Positions 23,701-39,621 of a stretch of DNA of 59,788 bases are shown here, one piece after another. This DNA comes from Vitrella brassicaformis CCMP3155 (Eukaryota > Protista > Chromerida), in contig CDMY01000519.1 in the NCBI GenBank assembly GCA_001179505.1, forward strand, positions 1-59,788, given 5' to 3'. A program made the position numbers and the translations under genes. Position 1 is the first letter of the stretch; the number at the start of each line of letters is the position of its first letter. A model generated the notes under the pieces. The model was given only the letters and a program-made list of their open reading frames with translations, was not told the origin of the DNA and searched no databases.

Positions 23701-25190
23701 CTCTCTCTTTCTCTCTCTGTGTGTGTGTGTGTGTAGGCGTCGATGCGGTCTGAGCTGATGCTGCCGACGATGGCGATTGTTGACCCGATGCTGACGGTGT
23801 CTGCCCCATGCAACGTTACCGCTTCCACCGGCCTGGACGCACTCACGCAGGTATGCTGGATGGATGGGTGGATGCCATACGTCCAGACACACACGCGCAC
23901 CCTTCACGGAGTAATGGGTCGTCCTCAGTGCATCGAGCCATATGTGAGTCACCTGGCGAATCCGCTGACGGATGCTTTGGCCAAGGAGGGCATCAAGAGG
24001 GCAGCCAGGAGCCTCCGGGCCGCTTACAGAGACCCCAAGGACATCGCCGCACGAGAGGAAATGGTCAGTCAGCCAGTCAGTCACAAATACATACATGCGA
24101 TGCGCACACGAGTCACTCCTCGACTCCTTGACTCATTCACTCACTAACTGACTGCAGGCTCTGGCGTCTGTCTTGGGTGGGTTGTCTCTGGCCAACGCCA
24201 AGCTAGGTGCTGTCCATGGCTTTGCTGGTGTCCTGGGGGGCTTATACCCTACTGCGGCCCACGGCGCCATCTGCGCCGCACTACTGCCCTTTGTCTTCGA
24301 GATGAACGTCGCAGCACTCTCAGACGAATACGTACGTGGGCATTCCCTCCCGTTGACGGATACCAGCCCCCGATGGATGGATAGATGGATGAGTGGGCAT
24401 TCTCTGTCTGTCCGTTTACTTACGTGTCTGTCTGTTGTCTCCCCCGCCCCATTCAGAGCCGCACGCAGGACCCGGCCGTCGTGCGGAGGTTGGCGAAGTT
24501 CACGGAAGTGGCCAGGATAGTCACCAGTGAGTCAGTCACCAACCAGGCCTGGCCTGACGCACACAAGACACGCAACAGGCAGCCCTCCCTGTGTAGCATC
24601 CATCCATGCGTCCACCGTTTGACTATTCCTCCTTGTTCATGTGTGTGATGACGGGTCGATCAACCGATCGATCTATCTTGTGGCGATCGATCGATCAGAC
24701 AATCCCGATGCGACGGCTGAGGAGGGCGCCGAGTGGCTCAGTGCCCTTGCCACGGACCTTCATGTGCCACTCCTGGGTGAGTAGCTAGGCGAGTGCCTGT
24801 GCGGCCATGACAGCTTACGTTGATCTTATTTTGTGGTGTCTTATGAAGGCGAATACGGGCTCACCCCAGACCAGTTTCACAAGGTGGGTGCGTGGGTGGG
24901 TGGGAGCTAGGACAGTGAGTGCTGTGCTGCATTGATTGCTCGTACAACCCACGGCCTGGCTGCATACATGCGCTGCACGTGTGGTCTGTGGTTGGTTGGT
25001 TGGTTGGTTGGTGGGTTGGACAGGTCGCAGAGGTCAGCGCGGCGTCGAGTTCGATGAAAGGCAAGTTCGATGAAAGGCAATCGCGTACACAAATGCTCAC
25101 ACACTGACGTATGATGAATACATACGTTCAGGTAATCCTGTGCAGCTCTCCATCGACCAGCTCAAGACCATCCTCAAACAAGCCACCTAG
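20792..25190 (+). CDS. Fusion: signal+transit-like peptide, two ABM (LsrG-like) domains, iron-containing alcohol dehydrogenase
   Basis: Leader MRVAVWCILWCLHSTSALAF. ABM1 ANAKNSVNEAGVARFDFLR..CLIEVY..HKETAHYNTW; ABM2 ANCECSVREPGVSRFDLLR..LVEVY..HKETKHYQTW. Fe-ADH GGGSAIDAGK, PTTSGTGSEVT, DALTQCIE, LGAVHG, AAHGAICA. Splice phases checked at several junctions were consistent. Confidence 0.87.
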
Positions 25191-25732
25191 CGAATGGCTG
25201 TGGCGCGTTCATATTGTGTGCGTGCATTTATCATCGTTGGTGTGTGTGGGGGGCGGGCAGGCGGGCGGGCGTGTTCGCTGCGGTCTGTTGTGTTGTATTG
25301 TGTTGTGTGGGTGGCGGGCTGCATGCATCTCTCGATAGCGAGAGGCTGCACATTTTTAGGACTGTGCATCGTATGCGAATGAGACAAGGCTTAGAGTCAA
25401 TCGGACATTATTCGTCGAAACCTTTTTACGCTTCAGTAGGGTAGGTATGTGGTGCGCACATATCCTGGCCACTCTGCATTCAGCCAGCTTTCCTGGCCTT
25501 GGCAAGCTTCTGGCGTAGGGCACTGCACCCCGGAAGCAAGCCAAGCCATATATATCGATCGCATCGACTGCTTACAGTACAGTACAGGTATATGTACTGT
25601 CATCAGCTATCGACTGTCATCAAGCTGACATGGTGTCATACGCCAGCCCAATCTATCTATCCCTCAATCTATCTATATATATCTGAGGGAGCAAAGCCCC
25701 CGGTGCAGTGGCAGTGACCACTGGCTCGATGT

Positions 25733-28700
25733 TCAGTCAATCTCTCGTTTGGAAGATACCTCTCTGCCTGCCTTTCGCCGATAAGACTCAAAGAAACTCA
25801 CACTCTCAGCATTGGTCCTGGGCTGCATTCTTCGGAGCGCCTCTCTCAAGTGTGAAGCCGATACGAGCACACAGCTCGGCCCCCCGTTGTCCCGTCCTGT
25901 TGCGTGTGAGCCACCCCGGTCGTCTTGCCCTGCGCGGATTGCGGCTCGAATGGCGGCCATAGCTGCCTCCCGACAGACCATGCATATCTCCGCTCCGCTG
26001 TATCCCTTGCTGTTGTTGACCAGCTGTCCCAGGAAAGTCTCGAGAGACATGCTGTCCTGACCGCCTTGTGAGTCTTGAGTGCCTAGGTCGAGAGGCAGGC
26101 GACTCAGATTGGCCTTGAAGATCTCGTATCGAGCGGCAGCGTCAGGCAGGGAGACGTACAGGAGACGATCGAACCGACCGGGCCTGCGATACCGCAGGAA
26201 GGAAGGAACGACAGACGCAGTGCAGCTAGTCGATTGATAGCTTATCGATCCATCAACACAAGCAGGTACGCACTGAGCCACCTGAGAAGAGCTGCATCAA
26301 GAAGGTCAGGCCGATTCGTCGCAGCTATAACAACCACCTGCCTGCAAGCAGGAAGCTACCACAGCTGTCCCCTGCCTGCCTGCCTGCCTGGCGGTCTGTC
26401 TGTCTGGCTGGGTACAGCAGGTGACTTGGCTTACTTGACGGGAGCAATGCCGTCAATCTCGTTGAGCAGCTGACTGAGGACCCGGCTACCAACCTGATGA
26501 GGACATGTATATCATAATTCACTCGGCACATTCCTGTTGACCCACAGATCTGTCGGTAAGTGGCGCTTCTTTCCTTACCCCTCCTGCATCTCCTCCCAGC
26601 TCTCGGTCCACACCGAGGGCATCGATTTCATCGAAGAATACCACGCAGGGAGAGTTCTGACGTGCCTTCCTACACGCATCCACGACACCATACACTCGTG
26701 GATGCCCTCCTCCCCCCAGTGCTGGCTGCGACTTGAGCTCCCCAGACCTGAAGAGTTCCCGAACAGCCCGCTCCGCCTCGCCCACCCATTTTGAGAAGAG
26801 CTCCGGACCCTGTAGGAGGGAGGTAAAGTAGCACGGCACGAGAGACAAGCACATGACCGGATGCGGGCAACTGGAACAGACAGCAATGAGTACCTTGATC
26901 GAGATGAAATTCATTTGAGTCTCAGTAGCTACTGCCTTGGCCATCATGGTTTTGGAATTGCCGGGGGGACCGTAGAGCAGCACTCCACGGGGAGGGCTCA
27001 GCTGCAGATCGCGAAACAACTGACAGATACACAACACGGACACGTCACAACTATTTTGTGCTTGACTGACAGCCACACTGGACGGTCTGTCTTTCGCGGC
27101 GCAATCGGCGCACATGTCACCCACCTGCTCATATCTGATAGGCCAGTCGACGCATTCCTGCAGCTGGCTCTTCAGGTCATGATATCTGGGCCACATACAC
27201 AGAGGCATCTCTCCTTCCGCTGTGAGCTTGACTCGTACCCTCCGATATCACTCCATCTGACCTCCGGCACCTCTATGTGCAACTCCTTCATCCCAGACGG
27301 CCTGCCAACACCGTCACAGCCAGCCAAACTCGCCACTCACACCCGTTGTTGCTTGGCTGTGTCGTGTTGACCTGACGAGCTTGAGCGCCTCCTCAAAGCA
27401 ACTCAAGTTTAACACACTTTCTGCAGGCGGCCCGGCGGGTGAGCGAGAAGATACACGAGTCAGAGCGACAGACGCAGCAGTGTTCACAAGGGCTACCAAA
27501 TCGGCGCCGACAAAAGCCTGGCACCTCTTGCTGAGCTGCAGACATGCACAGCAAGCACAAAGGAAGGACACCGATTGTATATGTCGAAGGCAGCCAGCCG
27601 GCGAGCATGGCTGCCTATCCATCCGTCGGTCGGTCGGTCCGTCCGTCCGTCCATCCGTCTGACCTCTTCGATGTCTATGTCGGTCAGGGTGTGGGGCAGG
27701 TGTTGGATCGCAATCCTGATGATCTGCTGGCGGTCGGTGGCCGTCGGCACTCCGACCTCTACCTCCCTCTCCAACCTGCCGCACCGCCGGAGGGCCGTGT
27801 CCAAACTGTTCGGACGATTCGTGGCAGCAAGAACAAACACCCCCGGGCACGCACGAGACCCATCCAAACACGTCAGAAAGGTCCCAACGATGCGACGCTC
27901 AGCCTGGTCCGATACGATTGCATATTAAGCAAAGAAACGACCAAGAGTCAATGCGGGCGAACTCAGGTCGGCTTGTCTTTCTGTGCTGCTTGTGCGGTCA
28001 CTAGCTCATTGTGCCAGTCACTCAACTCACCTCGCCTGCCTGATCCCTTTGCGGACATATGGCATCAATCTCGTCGATAAAGATGAGAGTAGGTGTCCCA
28101 TAACGTTCCCATCTTTCTTGACCCCTCTCAAATAAGTTGATGATTTTGCGCTCGGACTCTCCCACGAAGTGACCCAGTAAGTCGGTCGCGGCGACCACCT
28201 CCAACCCTATGCCAACACCCTCCGCCACATGCCTCTGGTGTTGTTCTAGCTCCTCCACAAGACAGCGAGCCAGGAGCGTTTTGCCCGTTCCTGGAGGTCC
28301 GTACAGCAAGACGCCTTTAGGAGGTCGTACGCCATACTCTTTGTACAGCGACGGGTGTAGCAGCGGCCACTGCAGGATGCTCTGCAGCTGCTCCACCACG
28401 GACTGGAATCCTCCAAACCTGCCGACACTGTCTCTATTAGAAGGTGCGGCTGGAGGCGTGTGGGGCTGAGTTTACCTGCGAAATCCACTTGAGTCGCGTT
28501 TGGTGTCGTCAACGCCGTGTGAATCCTTCGCCCCTTCTGCGTGGCCAGCCAGCTGCAATGGAGGTGCATGTACAGCGACTGACGTCGTCACCTCCACCCT
28601 TCCGCAGAGCAGCTGGCCACTCGTCGCTGCTCCTGCATCTAAGCCGTCGTGCTTGTCGTACGAAGAATGGAAAGCCAACTCAGGCTCGTCACCTCCCTCT

Positions 28701-29504
28701 CCCGACTGCCTTCCACTAACGTGATCTTGATGTCCAGCTTCGGAGCCGCGGGAATGCCGCTCGATGCGCCCAGCGGGCGATGGATCGGGAGGAGGTTCAC
28801 CAGGCTGAAGGGCGACGTCGACGATTCTGAAAGCCGCCAAGCTTCCACGCAAGGAGACAACGATCCAGTTGGACAAGCTGTAGTAGCCCCCCTGGATCGA
28901 AGCTTTCAAGTACGACACTGACGCAGGATCACCCAAAGAAGACACCAGGGGGAGCTCAGACGGGAGCCCGCCGGCAGCAAGACGAGAAACAATGGATGGC
29001 GGGGCGGCAGGGCACACCGTGATGGCCGCCGCGCTTCTCCAGTGATGCGATGCCAGCGGTACCAGTAGACCACTTGTTCGCCGCATGGTCAACGAGGCTG
29101 CCTTCCCGCATTCTTGTCGCCCGCCTTCGTCTTGTTCTTCTTCGGTAATTGATAAGTACATTGCCAGGGAAACCGCCGCACTCGAGGGAGGGAGCCTGTC
29201 ATCCTTGCAAAGGAATCCAACAGCCTGAGGTGGATGACACGCCGCAGACCGCGACGAATCCGCTCCACAATGCTTGATCATCACTAGCTGGCCCTCATGC
29301 AGACCACGTTGGCTCATCAGCTTAGGATGCACCCGAACGCCGCGGGCTCCAACGTTGTAAAGGGAAAGATCCTCCCAAAGGATGACGTCAAGCGATTCCT
29401 CATTGTCCTTCCTCTGCCGACTGCATGGTCAGGACACAAACGCAATCATTCACACACCACCAAGGTTGCACGAACTTCCATCGAGCTCACCTCAGAGTAC
29501 TCAT
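25733..29504 (-). CDS. AFG2: AFG2/SPATA5 (Drg1-type) double AAA+ ATPase, 60S biogenesis
   Basis: D1 KGVLLYGPPGTGKT / IFIDEIDAI; D2 RGVLLYGPPGNSKT (AFG2-like xSKT Walker A), PELFSKWVGEAERAVRELF, FFDEIDAL, RPGRFDRLLYV. 14-nt exon 1 (29491-29504) splices in frame into the 28472 ORF. Confidence 0.88.
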
Positions 29505-29729
29505 CTTGATTCAGGTCGGTCTTATGCCGAAAGCAAGCTACATCTATGCGGAAAGGATGGCGTCTCACGATCGAACCAATGTTCGGAAAATGCCGCTCGT
29601 CCCCTTCCTTCGTTCCTGGCAAGCGTGGTGCGGCAGCCGTAGCTGATCTCAACGTGCGACGTCGGAGTTGCGAACCGGATCGAGGAATGTCATACTAGCT
29701 CGCTAGCGAAAGAAAGCTGCCTATGTTGC
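29459..29729 (-). promoter_or_regulatory. Bidirectional promoter AFG2/RRP12; copy A of a duplicated cassette
   Basis: ATGs 219 bp apart, head-to-head; the reverse complement aligns to 37209-37485. Confidence 0.8.
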
Positions 29730-32700
29730 CAGAACACTCAAGCGTCGCCGCGGATGTGGTGAGCTAAGACCACAACGTTGATAACTGACTTCGTTGTACC
29801 TTTGGGTGCCAGGCATTGTGGTTGAGCGAGAGGAAAGACGCGCTTGCGGACCGTGGGGAAGTACAGGTTTACGAGCATGCATCGGTGTGCCTCGACGCCA
29901 TCGAGCAGGCTATACCAAGGCAGCCGAGAGAGGTCACGGTTTACCTTTCGGCGACCATTGCCTCCCTGCTTTTGGAGCTCGAGGAGTGGACGGGTGGGAG
30001 TGACACTCGTCTGCAAGGTCTGGCGCTTTTGGTGGGGCTCTTCTTGCGGCACGTCCCTCTGACAGCAACACCATCTTTGGCTGCCACGGAAGGCTCGCTG
30101 TTTGAGGCAATGGAGAAGGTCAGGAGCAAGCAAGAGGGAGCGAGGGAGAAAACTATCCTGCTGGGAGTCCTCACGCGGCTGCTGGAGTGCCTCGCGGCTA
30201 TGTACGACGTGCTACACGCGCATGGAAGTCACAATCAGCCACGCGCGGGACCCCTGAAAACGCTGCTGTCGGTGCTTTTTGAGGCGGGTGAAGAATCTCG
30301 AGTGGCTGCGTTGAAGTGCGTGGTCGCGCTCTGCCGCTTCGAGCAACAGTCTGGGCACGAGCTTGCAGGCTTCACGCCGCACCTGGGCAGTCTAGTCTTC
30401 AGTGACAGAACTCAGTCGGATCCAGTGACGAAACGAACGGCAATTCGGCTTCTCCGTTCGCTGCTCCCATTCATTCCTGTGAAGACCTTCCGAGAAGTAG
30501 TCGACGATGTGATCATCCGCATGGCGAAAGGGGTCGCCGGAGCTACCAGTGAGGCAGCAAACGGCCTGCGGCTTATTACCGAATATCTAGCGCCGCAGGA
30601 GAGCGATCCCAGCCCCTTCGCATCATCGCGCGTGGAAGCAGATGATCTCTTTTTCTTCGCAAACAGGCTAGCCGTGGAGCGAGATTCTTTGAACCTCAAA
30701 GACATCGGAATATCCTCTGCTTTCATCGAAGTCAGCGGAAACGTGATTGCAGCGATGTGTGAGCAGGGTGCGCAGCAGATCACGCAAGACAGATCACGCC
30801 ACGATTTATTGATTCAAATTGATGATCTGCCGCCTTGTGAATCGGATCAGGTCGGACGACGAATGATCTCTTGTATGACTGGTGGTCCTTTTCAAAAAGG
30901 CGGCTTGAAGAAGGAGAGCCGTTGCTGACCTACACCATCACAAAAGCCATGGTACATTTGCTATTCCACTGAAGGCATCAGAATTTACTTCATGTGTAAC
31001 CCCAGGGAAAAGTGGTTAGCTGTGCAGTTGCACACGATGTCGAGGACTTTCCTCGTCTTGTCAAGGAATGCAGGTGAGGTGTATTGCCTTAATATTCTGC
31101 CTTTTGAATCTTCAAGCCCTCCCCTGATGGTCTGGTCTTTCCACAGGTCTTTGTTAGAGTATCGTTTGAAAGGTGTGTGGCCGTCGGTATTCCCCGTGAT
31201 CACGGAACTCTTCACGGCAATCGAGCAACGCGGGCTAGAGTTCCTGCTGCAGCAGTACAGCCAGAGGCAGGCAGCTATGATTGACAAGGAAGACGATGAG
31301 CTGACCGACCAAGTCATTGAGGATTTCCGCTCTTTCTGCCGATTGCGGCTCCATCCGTGCCGTGGACTGCTAGAAGACTTGGCAAGCATCATGAAACGGG
31401 CAGTGGAGCCATTGGACCATTCAGCGACTCTTGCAACCTCGTCCCGGTATTAATCAGAAATGTTTACGTTGACGGATTGCGGACAAGTTTGTTTCGAATT
31501 TTTCCGCAGCCGGGGTGTGGAAGATGCCTTGGGCGCCGCAGCGGTCGCATTTTCGGCAGCTCTACCAGAAGTTCTGAAGCTGCCCTTCTTCGAGCTACGT
31601 CTCGACAGCGTGCCCATCACTGATCCAGAATTCTCCACCAAGGCAAACTCCTGGCTGTTGCCTGTTCTCAAGCGGGCGGTCAAGCGAACCTCGCTAGTTT
31701 ATTTCCAGAACGAACTCCTCCCATTGGTTCGTTAGAAAAGAACAGGAGCCACGAACAAGAGAAACTTTTCCTCTTCTCCCAGGCTTGTCAACTCCAGCAG
31801 CATGCTTCAAAGCTCCAGAATGAACACAGTCAAGACATCACAGCTGCGGCGTCTGCAAAGAAATATCAGCTGTTGGTGGGCAAAAGGGATTGGTACCTTC
31901 AGCTGAAGTCTCCGTCTTTTTGTTTTTTCTCCCAGGCCGACCAGATTTGGAGTTTGCTTCCCGCGTTCTTCACCGAACCAATTGACCTGAGTGCCGTCTT
32001 CCCTGATGCGCCTCAATCGTCTCCTTTGGCGAACACGATGCTGTCGTTTTTGGACACTCAGCCGTCGTTGCGCCATTTAATTTGCTCAGCACTCACGACG
32101 ATATGCGAGCAGTCAAACCTAGAGCACGGCGCCTCCGGCACGGGCGGCGAGGCTGTTGTTCTTAAGACAAGCCAAAGCCTCATCTGGCTTACGTCGAAGA
32201 GAAATCACCGTTCCCTCCGGTGTTATTCCGAGCGATTCTTGCCTCTTCTGTTCACGACGCTGTTGAAGCAGGAGGCGGAAGTGGGAAGTCTGAAGGCTAT
32301 ACAGGTGAAAACACTCTCGTACATTTCCTCCAAATGCTTTCATGTGTACACAGGCCTTAGCGCACTTCTGTCCTGGCAATGTACTCGATTCCTACTTGAA
32401 GAACATCTGCCGCAAGCTTCTGAAAGCGTCTTTGGCCGAGCCGGGAGGAGATGGCCGTTCTCGAGAACCGCACAACGTCGTCGTCCTCGAGTCTGCGGGT
32501 GGAATGGTGGCCCTTGCAGAGTTGGCGAATGCTCTAGTCCCGGCTCTTCCTGCTGAGACACGTAGGTCACGGCACGGAGTTCAGCAGTCAGAATGAGGGT
32601 CACTCGCCTTCTTGCTTCAGTACCCATTCTTCTGCGAGTAATGTGTCCTCTTCTCGTGAGCGAAGAGACGACAGTGGCCAAAGAAGGAGGAGGACGGAAA

Positions 32701-34670
32701 GGTTCGGTTCAGCTCAGTCGCCGTGCATACAAAGCCGTACGGAGTGTGATAGAGAGGGAATTGAACGAAAGCCTCGACAAGAGTGCCTTCTTACCAAAGA
32801 CACCTCTACACACAATTGAGGGCTGCAAAAAGCTTTGGGAGGTAGGTCACGAGCTGTTGTCACACTTTCTTTCATTTCGAATTTGTTCGAACCTTCAAAT
32901 ATAATATCAGCATTTGCAAAAGGCACGACAAGGATGTGGCCCTGGCGCTCTAAAGGTAGTAGGACTGATTGTCTCTTGGTCGTGTATACCTTTTTTCTTC
33001 CTTTTTAAGTCTCGGCTGAGCTGCATCAAGGTCTACTGTCGTCTGCTTTCGTTGCGACAAGGATCTCAAGGAGTTTGGCGGTCACATTTCCATGATGTCA
33101 GTGCATGTCTCGTCCCTGAAACCCTGATGTGTTGCAAAAGCACAAACCAGGTAGGAAAACACCTGTTTCGTTTGCTGACAATGACGTACACTCACCTTCA
33201 TTCTCTCTTCTAAGGCTGTGCGGGCGGACGCATTGGAGATCCTTAGACTGCTAGCCGCGTCATCTGGGGACGGTACTCTCACACGCCGTAGAAATAAACT
33301 CTTGTCTTTCCTCAAGGCTTTTTCAACGTGACTTTGGCAGTGAGTGACATCGTCGCGATGATTTCGGCCGGATTGGCAAGCACCAGTTCACCGATGAAAG
33401 CTGCAGCTGTACTCGCATTGACGCAGCTCTTGCTCAGTCATGGTAAATGAAGCCTGCCACCGTCTCCTCGCATCCGCTTCATTTCCCTCTAGGTTTGGCG
33501 GATACTGAACCATTCCGGCGAGTCGTTCGAATCGTGTTGCTTCTACTGGGGGATGGCGACAAGTCGGTTTTTGAAGCAAGTTTGAGATTCGCGAAGGTGA
33601 TTACGCAAGGTGTTAAGTTTTCTTGGGTGTGTCTCCCTTCCTTCTTTCTGTTATTTCAGGCTTGTGTGAGGATTTTGTCCCTGGAGGCCGTTACGGAAAA
33701 CCTGCCTCTCATACTAGAAATGCTTAATAACTCCCACGCAATTCGATGTACGCGCTATATGTGATCTCATCATTTTGATGCTTTTGCCGCCTTCTCCACA
33801 AAATCAGACCGTATTCTTCTTCACCGAGTTATTGAGAAGATGTTGAAGAGACTGGGTCCTGACTCGCTCGCAGCCGCTTTTCCTGCTGACAAAAAGGACC
33901 TCCTCTCGTATTGCGAGAAAAGAATGAGGCGAAGCAAACACGCTACGGCCCTGAAGCGTAAGAGGCGGGTCTTGGCGCACATGCACGGAGGCGTTAGCGA
34001 CGAAGCCGAGAGCGATAGCGAAAGTGAAGATATCGGCCGACAAAAGGATGCCGATTTTCGTATTGAAGAAGGCGTACCGAGTCTGCAGAACCTGCTTGAC
34101 GACTTCGAAATGGAAGACGGTCCGAGTCGCAAGGTCGGTGACGCATTTCTGGTGTCGAGTCTTGTTTCAGTATTTTGCTATGGGTGTTGTCAGAGATCCA
34201 GGGCATCAGGAACCCTTCAGCTCCGGGAGGAGCTCGATGACGAAACTATCGACCTTTTCGCCACCAGCGGTACGATCTTCATGGCTGGTTCATCAGTTTT
34301 GTATGACTAGATCGATTCTTACCGCAGCAAAACAAGCCTCGATCCGTCCAGAGTCTAGCAAGCAGCGGAAAACGGAAAAAAAGGTCTTAGAAGCCTTTGA
34401 GCCGCGCGGACAGATTTTCGGATCTTCCCGGGGACGTACGATATCCTCTAAAGAAACTGACGACCGGCAGCCAACGAAGAAGGGTCGAACAGGTCTGCAG
34501 AGCTACGCCTACATGCGCATTGGGAAGAAGTCGAGCCAAGGGCGCGGAGCAAAAAGAGTGAGTACCTTTCTCAGTTACACTCTCACAACGTGTGTCATAC
34601 TCGCATGTGTCGTCTGCAGCACATTGCCAAGACTCTCAGACTCTCTAGAAAAAAGGAAAGGAGACGCTGA
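29723..34670 (+). CDS. RRP12: RRP12-like ribosome export HEAT-repeat protein (NUC173 domain)
   Basis: ALGAAAVAF..NSWLLPVLKRAVKRTSLVYFQNELLPL, QIWSLLPAFFTEPIDL, LLEKMLKRLG..DKKDLLSY, C-terminal SYAYMRIGKK and basic tail; many short introns. Confidence 0.8.
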
Positions 34671-34914
34671 AAGCACTTTAATCCTGTACAAAGGAAAGGA
34701 GACGGATGACATTATGAAAAGCGCGATGGTCTGAAGTAGCACTAGCAAAAGCAATGTCGACGAAGCGCCCGATCTACAGTTTGCAGCATGTGCACAAGCG
34801 CAGATAGTACGCGCGTACCCCACTGCAAACTACCACGAGAAACGTCGGACACACGCGGAAAACCGCTTTCCTGCCTGCACTGCCTGTAAAATCCGCGCAC
34901 AGAAGTCTGACACT

Positions 34915-37215
34915 TCATAGCTTCGCAAAACTTGTTCCACGGTCTTGTAAAGGAACAATCTGCCTGGGTTCCGGCCCTGCAATTCCATCAACAGTCACGG
35001 TCTTCTCAAGTCGGGTACTGCTTGCTTACCAACGTAGAGGGACTGTGGACGGATTAGTCTGTTATCTTGGCGTTGCTCGACAACATGGGCAGCCCAGCCC
35101 GCGGTCCGCGCAATGATGAAAAGGGGAGTAAAAAACATTGTTGGAATGCCACACCTGAAAAGTTGGAAAAGCAAAAAAGGAATATACATAAGCCCGAACA
35201 GTCAATTGTTACTCGTGGTAGGCAGTGGCGCTGTAAAAATCCAAGTTCTGAAGAGACAAAGTTGACGTCTGATGCGTTGGGGATGTGCAGAGAGTAACAA
35301 GCCTTCCTGTACCGGATACATCTGTTTTCTCTCCAGCATGGTCTGAGAAAAAAAAGGCACTTATGGTTATAGCCGACCTGCGTTGAACAGAAAGCATCTT
35401 ACCTTTTCGACTGCCTCTGATATTCGGAAGAGCTTCGCATCCGAATTCGGACGCTCCGATAGAGCCCTGGCGAATTCCTTAATTAAAGGCGATCGGGGGT
35501 CTCCTGAGGAAGGGAGGAAGGAACGAAGGGAGGAAGGAAAGAAGGAAGGAAGGAACGAGTCTTCGGCATTGATTCGATCAAGCACGCCATCGCCCGCTTG
35601 CGATCACCCCTCCTGTTTACCGTGCTTGTACATCCTGAGGAAATCAGTGCTTTGCGCTTACTAACGTTGTTCGAAAGGCTTGCTCTTACCTGTGCCCAAA
35701 TCCCTGAGAAACACCGGAAACACCGGACAACCGACGGCATTCTTTTGACAACTCTCCTTTTTTTCCTTGGTTACCATCACAAGTTCTTTTCTTGCGAACA
35801 TTTGCTCTAGCTATAAGCAAGAGCGCGCGATGATTCAATCGTTCAATTCCGTTGCCAGTACCTGCTGTCTTGCGTCCATCTCGTCCTTAAAGCCCTCGAG
35901 CATGTGCCTGACGGGCGATTCAATCTTGAGCAATTGAGAGGGCAGTTTTGGTGCATTACATCGCCGCTTCGTTTGCTCCGCCATGCAAGGGACCTCGAAG
36001 GGTTCCTTGAATTTCAAAGGAAACAGATTTTGCACCTAACCTGCTCATGGTTTGCGTGCACACTATACATCACTCATACCTATTGCTGAAGTTATGCACG
36101 AGTAGAAGTCCGACAACGTTGCGCATGTTACTCGCGCCGCAAACGTTGAGGCTGCATTTAGCAAGGTAAAAAGTCCTGTGCTCTCTCCAGGCTGTCCCGT
36201 TCAGCCAGTTACCGTTGAAGTCATGTTCGGCATACAAGATCAGCGACGCATCGACCGTGCGGGCACACAAGGGATCAATCTGTGCCAAAGCAGTCAAAAT
36301 CGCTCCACAAGGCCACCCTGAGGGGTTTGCTCCATGTGTTTTCTGGTGTCTACCTTCTTCGGATCGTCATGGAGGAGATGCAGAAAGTGCTCCGCAACGG
36401 AATCCTTCTTGCTCGTTCCTGTGTGCGACGACCCCCTTGCTCAGTCTGCCTTCATCCTTCTCGCGTACCGGTGTCGATCCGCTTTCCAAAGTGGCTGAAG
36501 TGGTACCTGCAACGTTACCTCCGTCTGGGCGCTGTGTTTTCTTTCCCACCCTTTCTGCCTACCAGTAAAAGAGCATGGATGCGTAGCACGATATCAGACG
36601 GATGGCAATGTTCACTTGCTGCTCGTTTGGGTGTGTCTCTGGCTCAAACGTCCCCAACGTAGAGCATCCTGTTCGCAGAACGTCCTTTCACCAGAACAAT
36701 GAAAAAAGGCTGATAAGAAAATCCTGGTTTTGCTCGTAGCCCGCCTACCATAGGATGAGCATCCCTGGGGAGCTGTTCGAGCACTGTTCTCAAAGGCACC
36801 GGCAGGGCCCTGCAGGTGCCCAACGTGCAGAAACGTCAGACGAGGTGGAAATCGCCGCTATTGATCTCATTCACCGGTTGGCTGCTATTGTGTCTTGAAA
36901 GGAGTGTAACTGTGTCCGAGTAGGGAGTTCCTTGAAGAGGAGAAGGTATGCGACCTCTTCGAACGTACACTGGGAGCACAAATCCTCAATGGCATACCCT
37001 GGAGGGACATCAATCATCCAACTTGTCGCTCGCTGTCCTCGCGGCCTGCCCTTACCTCTGTACGTGAGGCCAGTGCCTTTGAGACCCACAGTCGATATCG
37101 AACTCTTCCCAGCAATGACTCCTGCAAGTCCCTTAGAGTAGGAATCAGCTGCCGTGCTGTTCATCCGCACTCCGAGAGGCAATCGAGTCGCCAACGGCAA
37201 CAAGCGGCGCAACAT
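34915..37215 (-). CDS. prpC: Bacterial-type citrate synthase / 2-methylcitrate synthase (PrpC-like), with mitochondrial-like presequence and C-terminal AKL
   Basis: GLAGVIAGKSSISTVG, LTYRGYAIEDL, TFEEVAYLLL, LYAEHDFN, VMGFGHRMYKHGDPRS, FTPLFIIARTAGWAAHVVEQRQDNRLIRP..YVGPEPR..SFAKL*. Confidence 0.85.
35504..35620 (+). repeat. Partial copy C of the promoter cassette, occupying most of a citrate synthase intron
   Basis: ggaaggaacgagtcttcggcattgattcgatcaagcacgccatcgcccgcttgcgatcacccctcctgt vs 37332-37400 ggaaggaacgaatcttcggcattgattcgatcaagcacgcgatcatccgctcgcgatcacccctcctgt. Confidence 0.92.
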
Positions 37216-37485
37216 GAGCCTCTCTCACGCTGGAGGAGCGAGCTAGAACTGCACACGGAGGGTTGATTCAGGCGTGGACGCTAAGATCAAACACCTTGCC
37301 GCACAGGCTTGCCAGGCAACGAAGGCAGGGAGGAAGGAACGAATCTTCGGCATTGATTCGATCAAGCACGCGATCATCCGCTCGCGATCACCCCTCCTGT
37401 CTGCCGTCGTGTCCGTGGTTTGACCAACCTGTAATCAAGATGAGTCTTCTGAGGTGAGCTCGATGAAACTTCGTGCAAACTTTGG
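37209..37485 (+). promoter_or_regulatory. Bidirectional promoter citrate synthase/DRG1; copy B of the duplicated cassette
   Basis: ATGs 225 bp apart, head-to-head; aligns to the reverse complement of copy A. Confidence 0.8.
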
Positions 37486-39621
37486 ATGTCTTTTCGCTGG
37501 TTCGTGTGTTTGCGATAGTAAAATAGCAGAGATTGAGGCCGAGATGGCGCGAACGCAAAAGAACAAGGCCACCAACTATCATCTCGGTCTGCTCAAGGCA
37601 AAGCTGGCCAAACTGAAGCAGCAGCTAGTAGGTCATGGTTGGTCCCGTCATCATTCATTGTGTGGAACTGTGTGTTGTGATGGTTTGCAGATATCCGGCA
37701 GTTCAGGCAAGGGAGGTGGCGGTGGCACTGATGGTTTTGATGTGACCAAGACAGGCGACGCTCGAGTAGGCCTCGTCGGGTTTCCATCCGTAGGGAAGTC
37801 GACTCTCCTCAATAAGCTCACGGGTCACGCTGAGATGGCTGCGTCAGAGGGAAGCATGCGATAATGCGCTGCCACCGTCGTCTTCGTCGTCTTGCAGGCA
37901 CGTATTCTGAGGTGGCGGCCTATGAGTTCACGACCCTTACCTGCGTCCCAGGGGTCTTCAAATACAAGGTAGAGAGCAGCGGGAGCCCGGCTCTGTCATC
38001 TTCAACTCTGCCTCCCTCTTTCCCTCTCCGTCGCAGGGCGCCAAGATACAGTTGCTTGACCTTCCTGGCATCATTGAGGGCGCTAAGGACGGCAAAGGAC
38101 GGGGTCGTCAGGTCATTGGTGTAGCGCGGACATGCAGCCTCATTCTCATCGTGCTGGACGTCATGAAGCCACTCACTCACAAGAGGATCATCGAAAAGGA
38201 GGTGGAGGGGTTTGGCATCCGGCTCAACAAAAAGCCGCCAAACATCACCATCACCAAGAAAGACAAGGGAGGCATCATTATCACCACCACACAGCCACTC
38301 AAGAAGATCGACGATGAGACTATCAAATCGATCTGTCACGAGTAAGAATACCAGCGCCAGTCGGTCTCACCGTGGATGAACATGTGTTGTGTCACCGTGC
38401 CACAGGTACAGGTGAGCGAGCGACCGACTGTGAGACGCACGCATCGACGGAAGGCATGTAGTCGTGTGACAAGCCTTGTCCACTTCTCTGAGCTGTAGAA
38501 TTGGCCACCTCAATGCGTGTGTGTGAATGCAGGATATCGAATGCCCAGATACAGATCCGTTGTCAGGCGACGGCAGACGACCTGATCGACGTCATAGAAG
38601 GGAACCGCGTCTATGTCCCGTGCATATACGTGCTCAATAAGATCGACCAGATCACTATCGAGGGTATGTATGTACGGACGTATGTATGTGTGCATGCACA
38701 CAGGGGCCTCTGAGAGAGAGAGAGAGAGAGAGACCCGTTGCACCACATCCCCGCTTCGGGAGCTTCTTGCTTGTTGGTTGCTGCAGAGCTGGACATATTA
38801 TCCAAGTGCCCACACTACGTGCCCATATCTGCGCACCATGAGTGGAATTTGGATGGGCTGATTGAGAAGATATGGCAGTACCTCGACCTCGTCCGCATCT
38901 ACACAAAACCGAAGGTACGAGTTGGGATGGGAACGGGAGACGCCACATGGCAGGCAGACAGGCAGGCAGCGTGGACGGACGGACGGACGGACGGACGGAC
39001 GGACACTTAAGTGCCTTGCGATTGATATCCCTTCTGTGTGTGTGTGCCCCACGTTACACATACGAATACATACTTACAGGGTCAGATTCCCGACTACAAC
39101 GCACCTGTCATTCTGAAAAGTGCTGAGACCAGAGTCGAGCACTTCTGCCTCCGAATCCACAAGACACTCCTCGCGCAGTTCAAACATGCTCTTGTGTGGG
39201 GCAAGTCGGTGAAACACAACCCACAAAAGGTCAGCTGCCTCAGCCAAAAGCAAACATCTATAGTTCATGATTCATGTACGTATGTGCTCACGGCTTCCTT
39301 CCCTTGGCCACTGCCCTGATGTGCTTGATGTGCATTAATGAATGGCAATGCAGGTCGGCAAGGAGCATGTCCTTCAGGTCAGTGAGTCTGCCACTAATTT
39401 CCGTCCGCTGTGTGTCAGCGGTTCATTCCTTGGCTTGGGTGCGTACACGTGTGGCTGTGTGTGCGTAGGACGAGGACGTTGTCCAGGTACATGTGGCCGA
39501 GGGCGAGAGGGGGCTTAGCCTGCCAAAACGCCATGCCGACCGATGTGTTAGAGTCTCTTCCCTCCTGCGTGTTGTGTTGGCCTGGCTGGCCTTTCGGTTG
39601 ATGCAGATCATCAAGAGATGA
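37440..39621 (+). CDS. DRG1: Developmentally regulated GTP-binding protein 1 (DRG1/Rbg1)
   Basis: MSLLS|[72 protein letters not shown] domain ending [18 protein letters not shown]. Confidence 0.96.

What the first reader, a model, noticed from the sequence alone, without database searches (positions are those of the whole stretch)
29459..37485. Whole bidirectional promoter duplicated ATG-to-ATG in inverted orientation: likely staggered-break inversion that swapped gene starts
Seen: the AFG2 start (revcomp) accgacctg-aatcaagATGAGTACTCTGAGgtgagctcgatggaagttcgtgcaaccttgg matches the DRG1 start accaacctgtaatcaagATGAGTCTTCTGAGgtgagctcgatgaaacttcgtgcaaactttgg. Both have a 14-nt exon 1 and the same donor. 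Similarity continues through the intergenic DNA (gccgcac..gcttgccagg.aacgaagg, cattg.ttcgatc) to the opposite ATGs: RRP12 ctagctcgctagcgaaagaaagctgcctATGTTGC vs citrate synthase ctagctcgctcctccagcgtgagagaggctcATGTTGC. Four unrelated genes therefore start from two copies of one ~270-bp cassette. Known: inversions from staggered breaks leave inverted duplications at both breakpoints, and the DRG1 N-terminus is conserved. Inference: the ancestor had RRP12 head-to-head with DRG1. Inverting the RRP12-CS block copied the promoter, so AFG2 took DRG1's exon 1 and donor and CS took RRP12's ATG. This would be promoter and start-codon capture by inversion.
Basis: partly seen in the sequence, partly recalled or inferred. 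Interest (0 to 1): 0.85.

Follow-up and report, generated by a model that had tools for sequence, protein, structure and literature searches.

The report
Duplicated gene-start module shared by four genes
In the alga Vitrella brassicaformis a ~270-base head-to-head gene-start region exists as two inverted copies around a two-gene block, and RNA shows that an unrelated ATPase gene starts with a copied first exon of the GTPase gene DRG1; how the copy arose is unresolved.

Summary
The window is contig CDMY01000519.1 of Vitrella brassicaformis.

**The repeat**
- L (29462-29729) and R (37211-37482) are homologous in inverted orientation.
- A 61-nt core around the ATG, 14 coding nt and splice donor is 88% identical.
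- The rest is 61-74% identical with indels, well above shuffles. One ~50-nt stretch does not align.

**Use by the genes**
- Spliced RNA contigs from two independent runs show AFG2 mRNA starting in L and removing intron 29421-29490.
- One of them also shows DRG1 doing the same from R, and both intergenic regions transcribed.
- Only two core copies exist in a whole-run DNA contig set, so this is not a dispersed element.
- The copied peptide (MSLL/MSTL) and its codons are DRG1-typical, so DRG1 is the source and AFG2 the recipient.

**New here**
- A third, partial, direct copy (35531-35623, 88% to R) forms almost a whole citrate synthase intron.

**Not shown**
- The inversion itself was not tested, because no outgroup gene order could be obtained.
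- A copy-paste (templated) insertion fits about as well.
- A clean-break version of the inversion cannot work without also losing an ancestral AFG2/citrate-synthase 5' region.

Unchecked scan notes list similar duplicated promoter or leader-exon modules elsewhere in this genome. Interest is moderate.

The parts
29462..29729 (-). L copy of the 5' module, inverted relative to R. It runs from 29 nt inside AFG2 intron 1 to RRP12 ATGTTGC.
   Evidence: Alignment to R with shuffle controls. An unbroken DNA contig covers 28400-29754.
29462..29521 (-). L core: the last 17-18 nt of the 5'UTR, 14 coding nt (MSTL + S) and the donor plus 29 nt of intron.
   Evidence: 88.5% identical to 37422-37482. The only other genomic match at 80% or more is the R copy (record 15).
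29491..29504 (-). AFG2 start codon (29504-29502) and the 14-nt coding part of exon 1.
   Evidence: The annotated 907-aa gene starts at 29504. RNA contigs L002 and L013 read ATGAGTACTCTGAG joined to exon 2.
29421..29490 (-). AFG2 intron 1, 70 nt, phase 2. Its first 29 nt belong to the duplicated module and its last 41 nt do not.
   Evidence: Removed in RNA contigs from two runs, ERR558152 and SRR646408.
29505..29674 (-). AFG2 5'UTR, at least 170 nt, covering most of the L module.
   Evidence: RNA contig L013 begins at 29674.
29723..29758 (+). RRP12 start codon and 36-nt coding exon 1 (MLPEHSSVAADV). It is followed by intron 29759-29812.
   Evidence: Protein P0001, a read laying joint in run X13 and L002.
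29723..37217 (.). Block enclosed by the two copies: RRP12 (+, 29723-34670) and citrate synthase (-, about 34990-37217). The two genes are convergent.
   Evidence: Pfam hits RRP12_HEAT and Citrate_synt, the annotation and the spliced contig L002.
35531..35623 (+). M: a third, partial, direct copy of the module's middle part. It lacks the ATG/exon/donor core. It makes up most of citrate synthase intron 35505-35620 on the minus strand.
   Evidence: 88% identical to R 37314-37407. Local score 126 against shuffles 20.5 +/- 2.2. The match to L is weaker (37 against 20.6 +/- 2.3). The intron is removed in L002.
37211..37482 (+). R copy of the 5' module, from citrate synthase ATGTTGC (minus strand) to 29 nt inside DRG1 intron 1.
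   Evidence: In RNA contig L002, 37055-37453 is contiguous.
37215..37217 (-). First in-frame ATG of citrate synthase. It opens an arginine-rich, presequence-like N-terminus, MLRRLLPLATRLPLGVR.
   Evidence: The ORF in L002 is open from this ATG, with a stop 3 codons upstream. The annotation and the gene caller use the second ATG at 37164, so this start is inferred.
37440..37453 (+). DRG1 start codon and the 14-nt coding part of exon 1 (MSLL + S). It is followed by intron 37454-37518 (65 nt, phase 2).
   Evidence: L002 junction and N-terminus [18 protein letters not shown], and the family N-termini.

Best explanation
**What is shown (about 0.9).**
- A ~270-bp head-to-head 5' module was copied once, locally and in inverted orientation. 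The two copies now bracket the convergent pair RRP12 and citrate synthase.
- One end of the module carries a start codon (ATGTTGC). RRP12 uses it in L and citrate synthase uses it in R.
- The other end carries a 5'UTR, a start codon, 14 coding nt, a splice donor and 29 nt of intron. DRG1 uses it in R and the AFG2-type AAA ATPase uses it in L.
- The copied exon is DRG1's own. AFG2 therefore took its start codon, first coding exon, donor and most of its 5'UTR from a copy of DRG1's 5' end. The join lies inside an intron, upstream of AFG2's own 41-nt intron tail and acceptor.
- The duplication looks old: the flanks are 40-74% identical. The 61-nt core is held at 88%, either by constraint or by a later conversion.

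**What is inferred (about 0.45).**
- The copy arose when the RRP12-citrate synthase block inverted. Staggered breaks across an ancestral RRP12/DRG1 module duplicated it at both ends of the inverted segment.
- The ancestral AFG2/citrate-synthase 5' region was lost in the same event or soon after.
For: - Homology and its limits.
- Copy number: the core has two copies only in a whole-run DNA contig set at 80% likeness or more. The L arrangement is unbroken in a DNA contig.
- Use by AFG2: its exon 1 is spliced to exon 2 in RNA contigs of two independent runs, and the annotated model starts at 29504.
- Use by the other genes: DRG1 and RRP12 first introns are confirmed. Both first introns are phase 2 and 65-70 nt long.
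- Direction: 81 of about 100 DRG1 homologs have five residues before K/R-I, mostly MS[VIL][LIV]Q, and MSLLQ and MSTLQ occur among them. Chromera DRG1 begins ATGAGTGTTCTT, matching Vitrella exon 1 at 13 of 15 nt.
- Gene identity: the best solved-structure matches of the ATPase are AFG2 proteins, at 528 bits against about 470 for CDC48/p97.
- Origin: inverted duplications of single-copy DNA at both ends of an inverted segment are the recognised footprint of staggered-break inversions (PMC3355041; PMC1885836 listed). The copies sit exactly at the two ends of a whole-gene block.
Against: - No outgroup gene order was obtained, so the inversion is not observed.
- The model needs a further loss of the ancestral AFG2/citrate-synthase 5' region. 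It also needs two new junctions that both happened to be functional.
- The direct partial copy M cannot be made by an inversion.
- Which of RRP12 and citrate synthase owns the ATGTTGC end is unknown.
- The core is much better conserved than its flanks. This could mean a later conversion, which would blur any dating.
- One environmental contig (run X10) departs from the reference inside the core at 29485. This is unexplained and may be a chimera.
Confidence: 0.45

Rival explanations
1. Copy-paste without inversion. The gene order AFG2-RRP12-citrate synthase-DRG1 is ancestral. A break between AFG2 and RRP12 was repaired by copying about 270 nt from the citrate synthase/DRG1 module 8 kb away, in inverted orientation (templated insertion or template switching). 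This replaced the old AFG2/RRP12 5' region, so both AFG2 and RRP12 captured new starts.
For: - M is a 93-nt direct copy of the same module 1.8 kb away, inside a citrate synthase intron. This shows that a non-inversion copying process acted on this sequence.
- The size and distance are those of local templated insertions, a known class (papers listed).
- The number of new junctions, two, is the same as in the inversion model.
- AFG2 and RRP12 are both ribosome-biogenesis factors, so they are a plausible ancestral pair.
Against: - The copies sit exactly at the ends of a whole-gene block, as the inversion footprint predicts.
- Replacing two gene starts at once by a single insert is also a demanding event.
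- No junction microhomology can be read at this age.
Confidence: 0.3
2. The two copies pre-date the present arrangement. For example, a larger inverted segmental duplication was followed by loss of redundant genes, or recombination or gene conversion between older copies occurred. The 88% core would then be a later conversion tract rather than a constrained element.
For: - There is a sharp contrast between the core (85-89%) and its flanks (40-74%).
- Core divergence equals that of the younger M-R pair, 88%.
Against: - No remnants of extra gene copies appear in the window self-comparison.
- No hybrid L/R contigs occur in the DNA run.
- The core also contains obvious functional sites (Kozak context, ATG, donor) that would be conserved anyway.
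Confidence: 0.17
3. A mobile or dispersed repeat (MITE, introner-like element or spliced-leader-type gene) that happens to lie in front of the genes.
For: There are three copies or part-copies within 8 kb, and one of them (M) is an intron. The M/R 93-nt part could not be searched genome-wide.
Against: - Only one other contig in a 143-Mb DNA contig set matches the L region at 80% or more, and it is the R copy.
- There are no other copies in the 59.8-kb contig.
- There are no terminal inverted repeats.
- The 10-nt direct repeat near M is acceptor consensus plus conserved coding sequence, not a target-site duplication.
- There is no Rfam match.
- Both exons are cis-spliced to their own genes.
Confidence: 0.04

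Closest known systems
Inverted duplications at the breakpoints of staggered-break inversions in Drosophila (Ranz et al. 2007, PMC1885836; Guillen and Ruiz 2012, PMC3355041)
   Same: Two copies of otherwise single-copy, non-repetitive DNA lie in inverted orientation at the two ends of a gene block. In Drosophila too, genes next to the breakpoints are altered or gain new parts.
   Different: - The duplicated piece here is only about 270 bp.
- It is a whole head-to-head 5' module whose two ends both supply start codons to unrelated genes.
- The organism is an alveolate alga.
- No uninverted relative is available, so the inversion itself is not demonstrated.
5' exon or promoter capture that forms chimeric genes (exon shuffling through intron-to-intron joins)
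   Same: An unrelated gene (AFG2) now uses a copied promoter/5'UTR, start codon, first coding exon and donor. The join lies inside an intron and the intron phase is kept.
   Different: - Only 4-5 codons are transferred, so the protein is barely chimeric. The gain is mostly a start codon, a 5'UTR and regulatory DNA.
- The opposite end of the same copied piece also serves a second gene.
Local templated insertions and template-switch repair (class listed)
   Same: A short copy of a nearby sequence is placed a few kb away, in either orientation. The M copy fits this class best.
   Different: No junction microhomology can be read, and the L copy replaces two gene starts at once.
Introns created from copied DNA (introner elements; filler-DNA intron gain) - comparison from general knowledge
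   Same: The 116-nt citrate synthase intron consists almost wholly of a copy of another sequence.
   Different: The source is the gene's own upstream module rather than a multi-copy element. Whether the intron was gained or only overwritten was not tested.

Membership tests
Staggered-break inversion footprint | The duplicated DNA is otherwise single-copy and non-repetitive. | tested here: met
   Only L and R match at the core in a whole-run DNA contig set and in the window. Caveat: a partial third copy, M, exists.
Staggered-break inversion footprint | The copies are inverted and lie at the two ends of the rearranged segment. | tested here: met
   L (29462-29729) and R (37211-37482) bracket RRP12 and citrate synthase.
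Staggered-break inversion footprint | A relative carries the segment in the other orientation with a single copy. | not testable with these tools
   Chromera DRG1 was found only on transcript contigs. Apicomplexan DRG1 neighbours are unrelated. Metagenome scans were empty.
5' exon / promoter capture | Unrelated genes share a homologous first exon plus flanking non-coding DNA. | tested here: met
   Gene identities come from Pfam, PDB and homolog searches.
5' exon / promoter capture | The recipient's mature mRNA uses the copied exon. | tested here: met
   RNA contigs from ERR558152 and SRR646408 join the L-specific exon 1 (codon ACT) to AFG2 exon 2.
5' exon / promoter capture | The donor gene can be identified. 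| tested here: met
   The DRG1-family N-terminal consensus and Chromera DRG1 codons match the exon.
Transposable element / introner | Many dispersed copies. | tested here: not met
   for the L region and core. The M/R 93-nt part was not searchable genome-wide.
Transposable element / introner | Terminal repeats and a target-site duplication. | tested here: not met
   No terminal repeats were found. The 10-nt repeat at M overlaps conserved coding sequence.
Spliced-leader RNA gene | A multi-copy small RNA gene whose exon is trans-spliced to many mRNAs. | tested here: not met
   There are two copies, each contiguous with and cis-spliced to its own gene. There is no Rfam match.
Invertible segment maintained by recombination between inverted repeats | Both orientations are present in DNA. 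| tested here: inconclusive
   No hybrid contigs were found in run X4, but contigs drop rare variants.

The most novel reading that the evidence does not exclude
This locus may be one verified example of a recurrent, lineage-typical process in Vitrella. Short head-to-head 5' modules (promoter/5'UTR, start codon, leader exon, donor) would be copied locally again and again, often as inverted pairs around two convergent genes. Unrelated neighbouring genes would then adopt them, and fragments of the same modules could even end up as introns (M). Break-prone divergent promoters would then be a main engine of 5'-end and regulatory evolution in this genome. The scan's unchecked notes on other contigs list at least eight look-alike cases.
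Probability: 0.3. Interest if true: 0.7.

Novelty: new variant of a known kind. Interest (0 to 1): 0.5.

Why it matters
This is a clean natural case, supported by RNA, in which one small rearrangement gave an essential-type gene (AFG2) a new start codon, first exon, splice donor and 5'UTR taken from another gene. The other end of the same copied piece starts yet another gene.

It shows how compact genomes with head-to-head genes can rewire gene starts and possibly co-regulation. AFG2, RRP12 and DRG1 all act on ribosomes, and all three now sit behind homologous modules.

The partial copy that forms a citrate synthase intron links promoter-module copying to intron origin. If the many similar unchecked notes in this genome hold up, the process is general in chromerids and worth a genome-wide study.

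Tried and rejected
- **Rfam:** a scan of 29000-38000 found no match.
- **Metagenome core scan:** a scan for the core pattern gave 0 hits.
- **Metagenome RRP12 scan:** a scan for RRP12 exon relatives found none.
- **Representative-protein search:** the RRP12 N-terminal exon found only the Vitrella protein itself, so no Chromera RRP12 was obtained.
- **AFG2 exon 2 search:** used as a protein query, it found nothing in its length band.
- **AFG2 full-length search:** the hits were CDC48-family proteins carrying no AFG2 name. The AFG2 label came from solved structures instead.
- **Chromera synteny:** DRG1 was found only on transcript contigs.
- **Apicomplexan DRG1 loci:** there is no RRP12 neighbour (tblastn E > 3) and no intron after nt 14. 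The intron is therefore lineage-specific or was lost there.
- **Longer citrate synthase ORF:** the 405-aa version is not on record.
- **Target-site duplication at M:** rejected, because the 12 nt between the repeats encode conserved YKH(G) of the GFGHRMYKHGDPR motif.
- **Donor hairpin:** the core folds into a donor-containing hairpin in both copies, but the z-scores are -0.7 and 0.1, so it is not significant.
- **Homology beyond the core:** it does not extend into the intron tail, exon 2, or the coding DNA past ATGTTGC.
- **X10 loose end:** it is absent from the window.
Full report
**Source and genes.** The window is the whole contig CDMY01000519.1 of assembly GCA_001179505.1, Vitrella brassicaformis. 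Four genes matter here.

| Gene | Strand | Coordinates | Evidence |
|---|---|---|---|
| Two-domain AAA ATPase, 907 aa (AFG2-type) | - | 25733-29504 | Pfam and annotation; best solved-structure matches are AFG2 proteins, 528 bits against about 470 for CDC48/p97 |
| RRP12, 1262 aa | + | 29723-34670 | |
| Citrate synthase | - | about 34990-37217 |; annotated as two split models |
| DRG1-type GTPase, 367 aa | + | from 37440 | |

Self-BLAST of the window returns only two repeats that are not low-complexity.
- The first is the inverted pair 29462-29521 / 37422-37482 (61 nt, 88.5%).
- A 33-nt pattern over the ATG, exon and donor occurs exactly twice and never in shuffles.
- The remaining ATG-to-ATG DNA (218 and 222 nt) also aligns far better than shuffles. 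The local score is 52 against 17.4 +/- 2.4, and the global score is 35.5 against -6.7 +/- 5.8.

**Identity along the module.**

| Segment | L versus R |
|---|---|
| Distal intergenic third | 61% (significant) |
| Middle | 74% |
| Proximal ~50 nt | not alignable |
| 5'UTR end, 14 coding nt and first 29-32 nt of intron | 85-89% |
| Rest of intron, exon 2, coding DNA beyond ATGTTGC | no similarity above shuffles |

Its shared blocks occur nowhere else in the contig, so they are not common promoter motifs.

**The copies are used.**
- A 10.2-kb contig from RNA run ERR558152 (L002) carries all four genes with more than fifty introns removed. In it 29491-29759 and 37055-37453 are contiguous. AFG2 intron 29421-29490 and DRG1 intron 37454-37518 are spliced out.
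- A second contig, from the unrelated run SRR646408 (L013), starts at 29674. It runs through the L-specific exon (ATGAGTACTCTGAG) and joins AFG2 exon 2. AFG2 therefore has a 5'UTR of at least 170 nt that covers most of L.
- RRP12 exon 1 and intron 29759-29812 are confirmed by a third run.
- The N-termini are MSTLSRQRK (AFG2), MSLLSKIAEIE (DRG1) and MLPEHSS (RRP12). For citrate synthase, the first in-frame ATG gives MLRRLLPLATRLPLGVR, which looks like a mitochondrial presequence. That citrate synthase start is inferred, because the annotation and gene caller use the second ATG.

**It is not a dispersed element.**
- I laid a whole DNA run (143 Mb of contigs) on 28400-30600 at 80% likeness. One unbroken contig covers 28400-29754.
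- Only one other contig touches the module. Its loose ends are the flanks of R.
- Rfam finds nothing.
The 93-nt M/R part could not be searched genome-wide.

**Direction of transfer.**
- Among about 100 DRG1 homologs, 81 have exactly five residues before the conserved K/R-I. These are mostly MSVLQ or MSILQ, and MSLLQ and MSTLQ also occur.
- Chromera velia DRG1 starts ATGAGTGTTCTT, matching Vitrella exon 1 at 13 of 15 nt around the ATG.
- The exon is therefore DRG1's own, and the AFG2 copy is derived.
- AFG2 needs it. Its exon 2 frame is closed by a stop just upstream, and the next in-frame Met is residue 37, inside the N-domain.
- The join lies within the intron, 29 nt after the donor and 41 nt before AFG2's acceptor. 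Both introns are phase 2.
- Toxoplasma, Babesia and Plasmodium DRG1 have no intron there, so the intron is specific to this lineage or was lost in apicomplexans.

**The third copy, M.**
- M (35531-35623) is 88% identical to R 37314-37407 and only weakly similar to L.
- At one aligned site (ACGC[C/G]ATC) M agrees with L against R (alignment). This fits M being a younger offshoot of R.
- M lacks the ATG/exon/donor core.
- M is almost the whole 116-nt citrate synthase intron 35505-35620. That intron and its neighbour cut the conserved GFGHRMYKHGDPR motif into 15-nt and 14-nt micro-exons. This probably explains why the annotation splits the gene in two.
- The 10-nt repeat flanking this unit is not a target-site duplication, because conserved coding sequence lies between its two copies.

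**How the L/R duplication arose remains open.**
- Staggered-break inversions leave inverted duplications of single-copy DNA at both ends of the inverted block (PMC3355041; PMC1885836). The layout here fits that footprint.
- The simple form, with one clean break at the AFG2/citrate-synthase end, would leave both genes without 5' ends in the ancestor. An ancestral 5' region must also have been lost.
- A templated copy-paste of R into the AFG2/RRP12 gap needs the same number of new junctions, two. It is also favoured by M, which no inversion can produce.
- I could not obtain any outgroup gene order.
- My odds for the origin are: inversion about 0.45, copy-paste about 0.30, older or more complex histories including later conversion of the core about 0.17, and a repeat family about 0.04.

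**Open points.**
- The core is far better conserved than its flanks. Both copies can fold the donor against the last bases of the core, but not better than shuffles. A later conversion tract is equally possible.
- A contig from a marine-sediment metagenome, about 99% identical in the flanks, leaves the reference at 29485. It carries an adapter at its other end, so it may be a chimera.

**Earlier scan notes.** The scan's earlier, unchecked notes on other contigs of this genome list many duplicated promoter or leader-exon modules. They include inverted repeats around two convergent genes and a duplicated bidirectional promoter bracketing a 5-kb block. I did not test them. They are a lead that the process may be recurrent, not support for this case.

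**Verdict.** This is a real, RNA-supported duplication of a gene-start module, with capture of a start codon and first exon by AFG2 from DRG1. The inversion mechanism is plausible but unproven. It is a new variant of known kinds of event, of moderate interest.

Noticed in passing
window 35505-35620 (- strand), with micro-exons 35621-35634 and 35690-35704: A 116-nt citrate synthase intron is made almost entirely of an 88% copy of the gene's own upstream module. With its neighbour it splits the catalytic GFGHRMYKHGDPR motif into 15-nt and 14-nt micro-exons. It may be a gained intron or an overwritten one.
   Followed up: partly
window 34915-37164: The public annotation splits citrate synthase into two gene models (121 and 267 aa) at the micro-exon/M region and starts it at the second ATG. 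A spliced RNA contig gives one ORF of 388 aa, or 405 aa from the first ATG.
   Followed up: partly
L002 (RNA contig ERR558152_15581) = window 24699-39232: One spliced contig runs through five genes on alternating strands. Neighbouring transcripts therefore overlap or abut at both 5'-5' and 3'-3' ends. The RRP12 and citrate synthase 3' ends share 34620-34977.
   Followed up: no
window 29184-29485 and beyond: A marine-sediment metagenome run of 2025 holds DNA about 99% identical to this contig, with scattered SNPs and an 18-nt insertion behind 28947. One of its contigs departs from the reference at 29485, inside the L core. It may be a chimera.
   Followed up: partly
window 35502-35559: A GGAAGGAA-type purine microsatellite lies at the edge of M. 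On the citrate synthase strand it serves as the intron's polypyrimidine tract.
   Followed up: no
window 37418-37490 and 29455-29525 (- strand): In both copies the end of exon 1 plus the donor (CUGAG|GU) can pair with (A/C)CUUUGG exactly at the end of the conserved core. The fold is not more stable than shuffles.
   Followed up: partly
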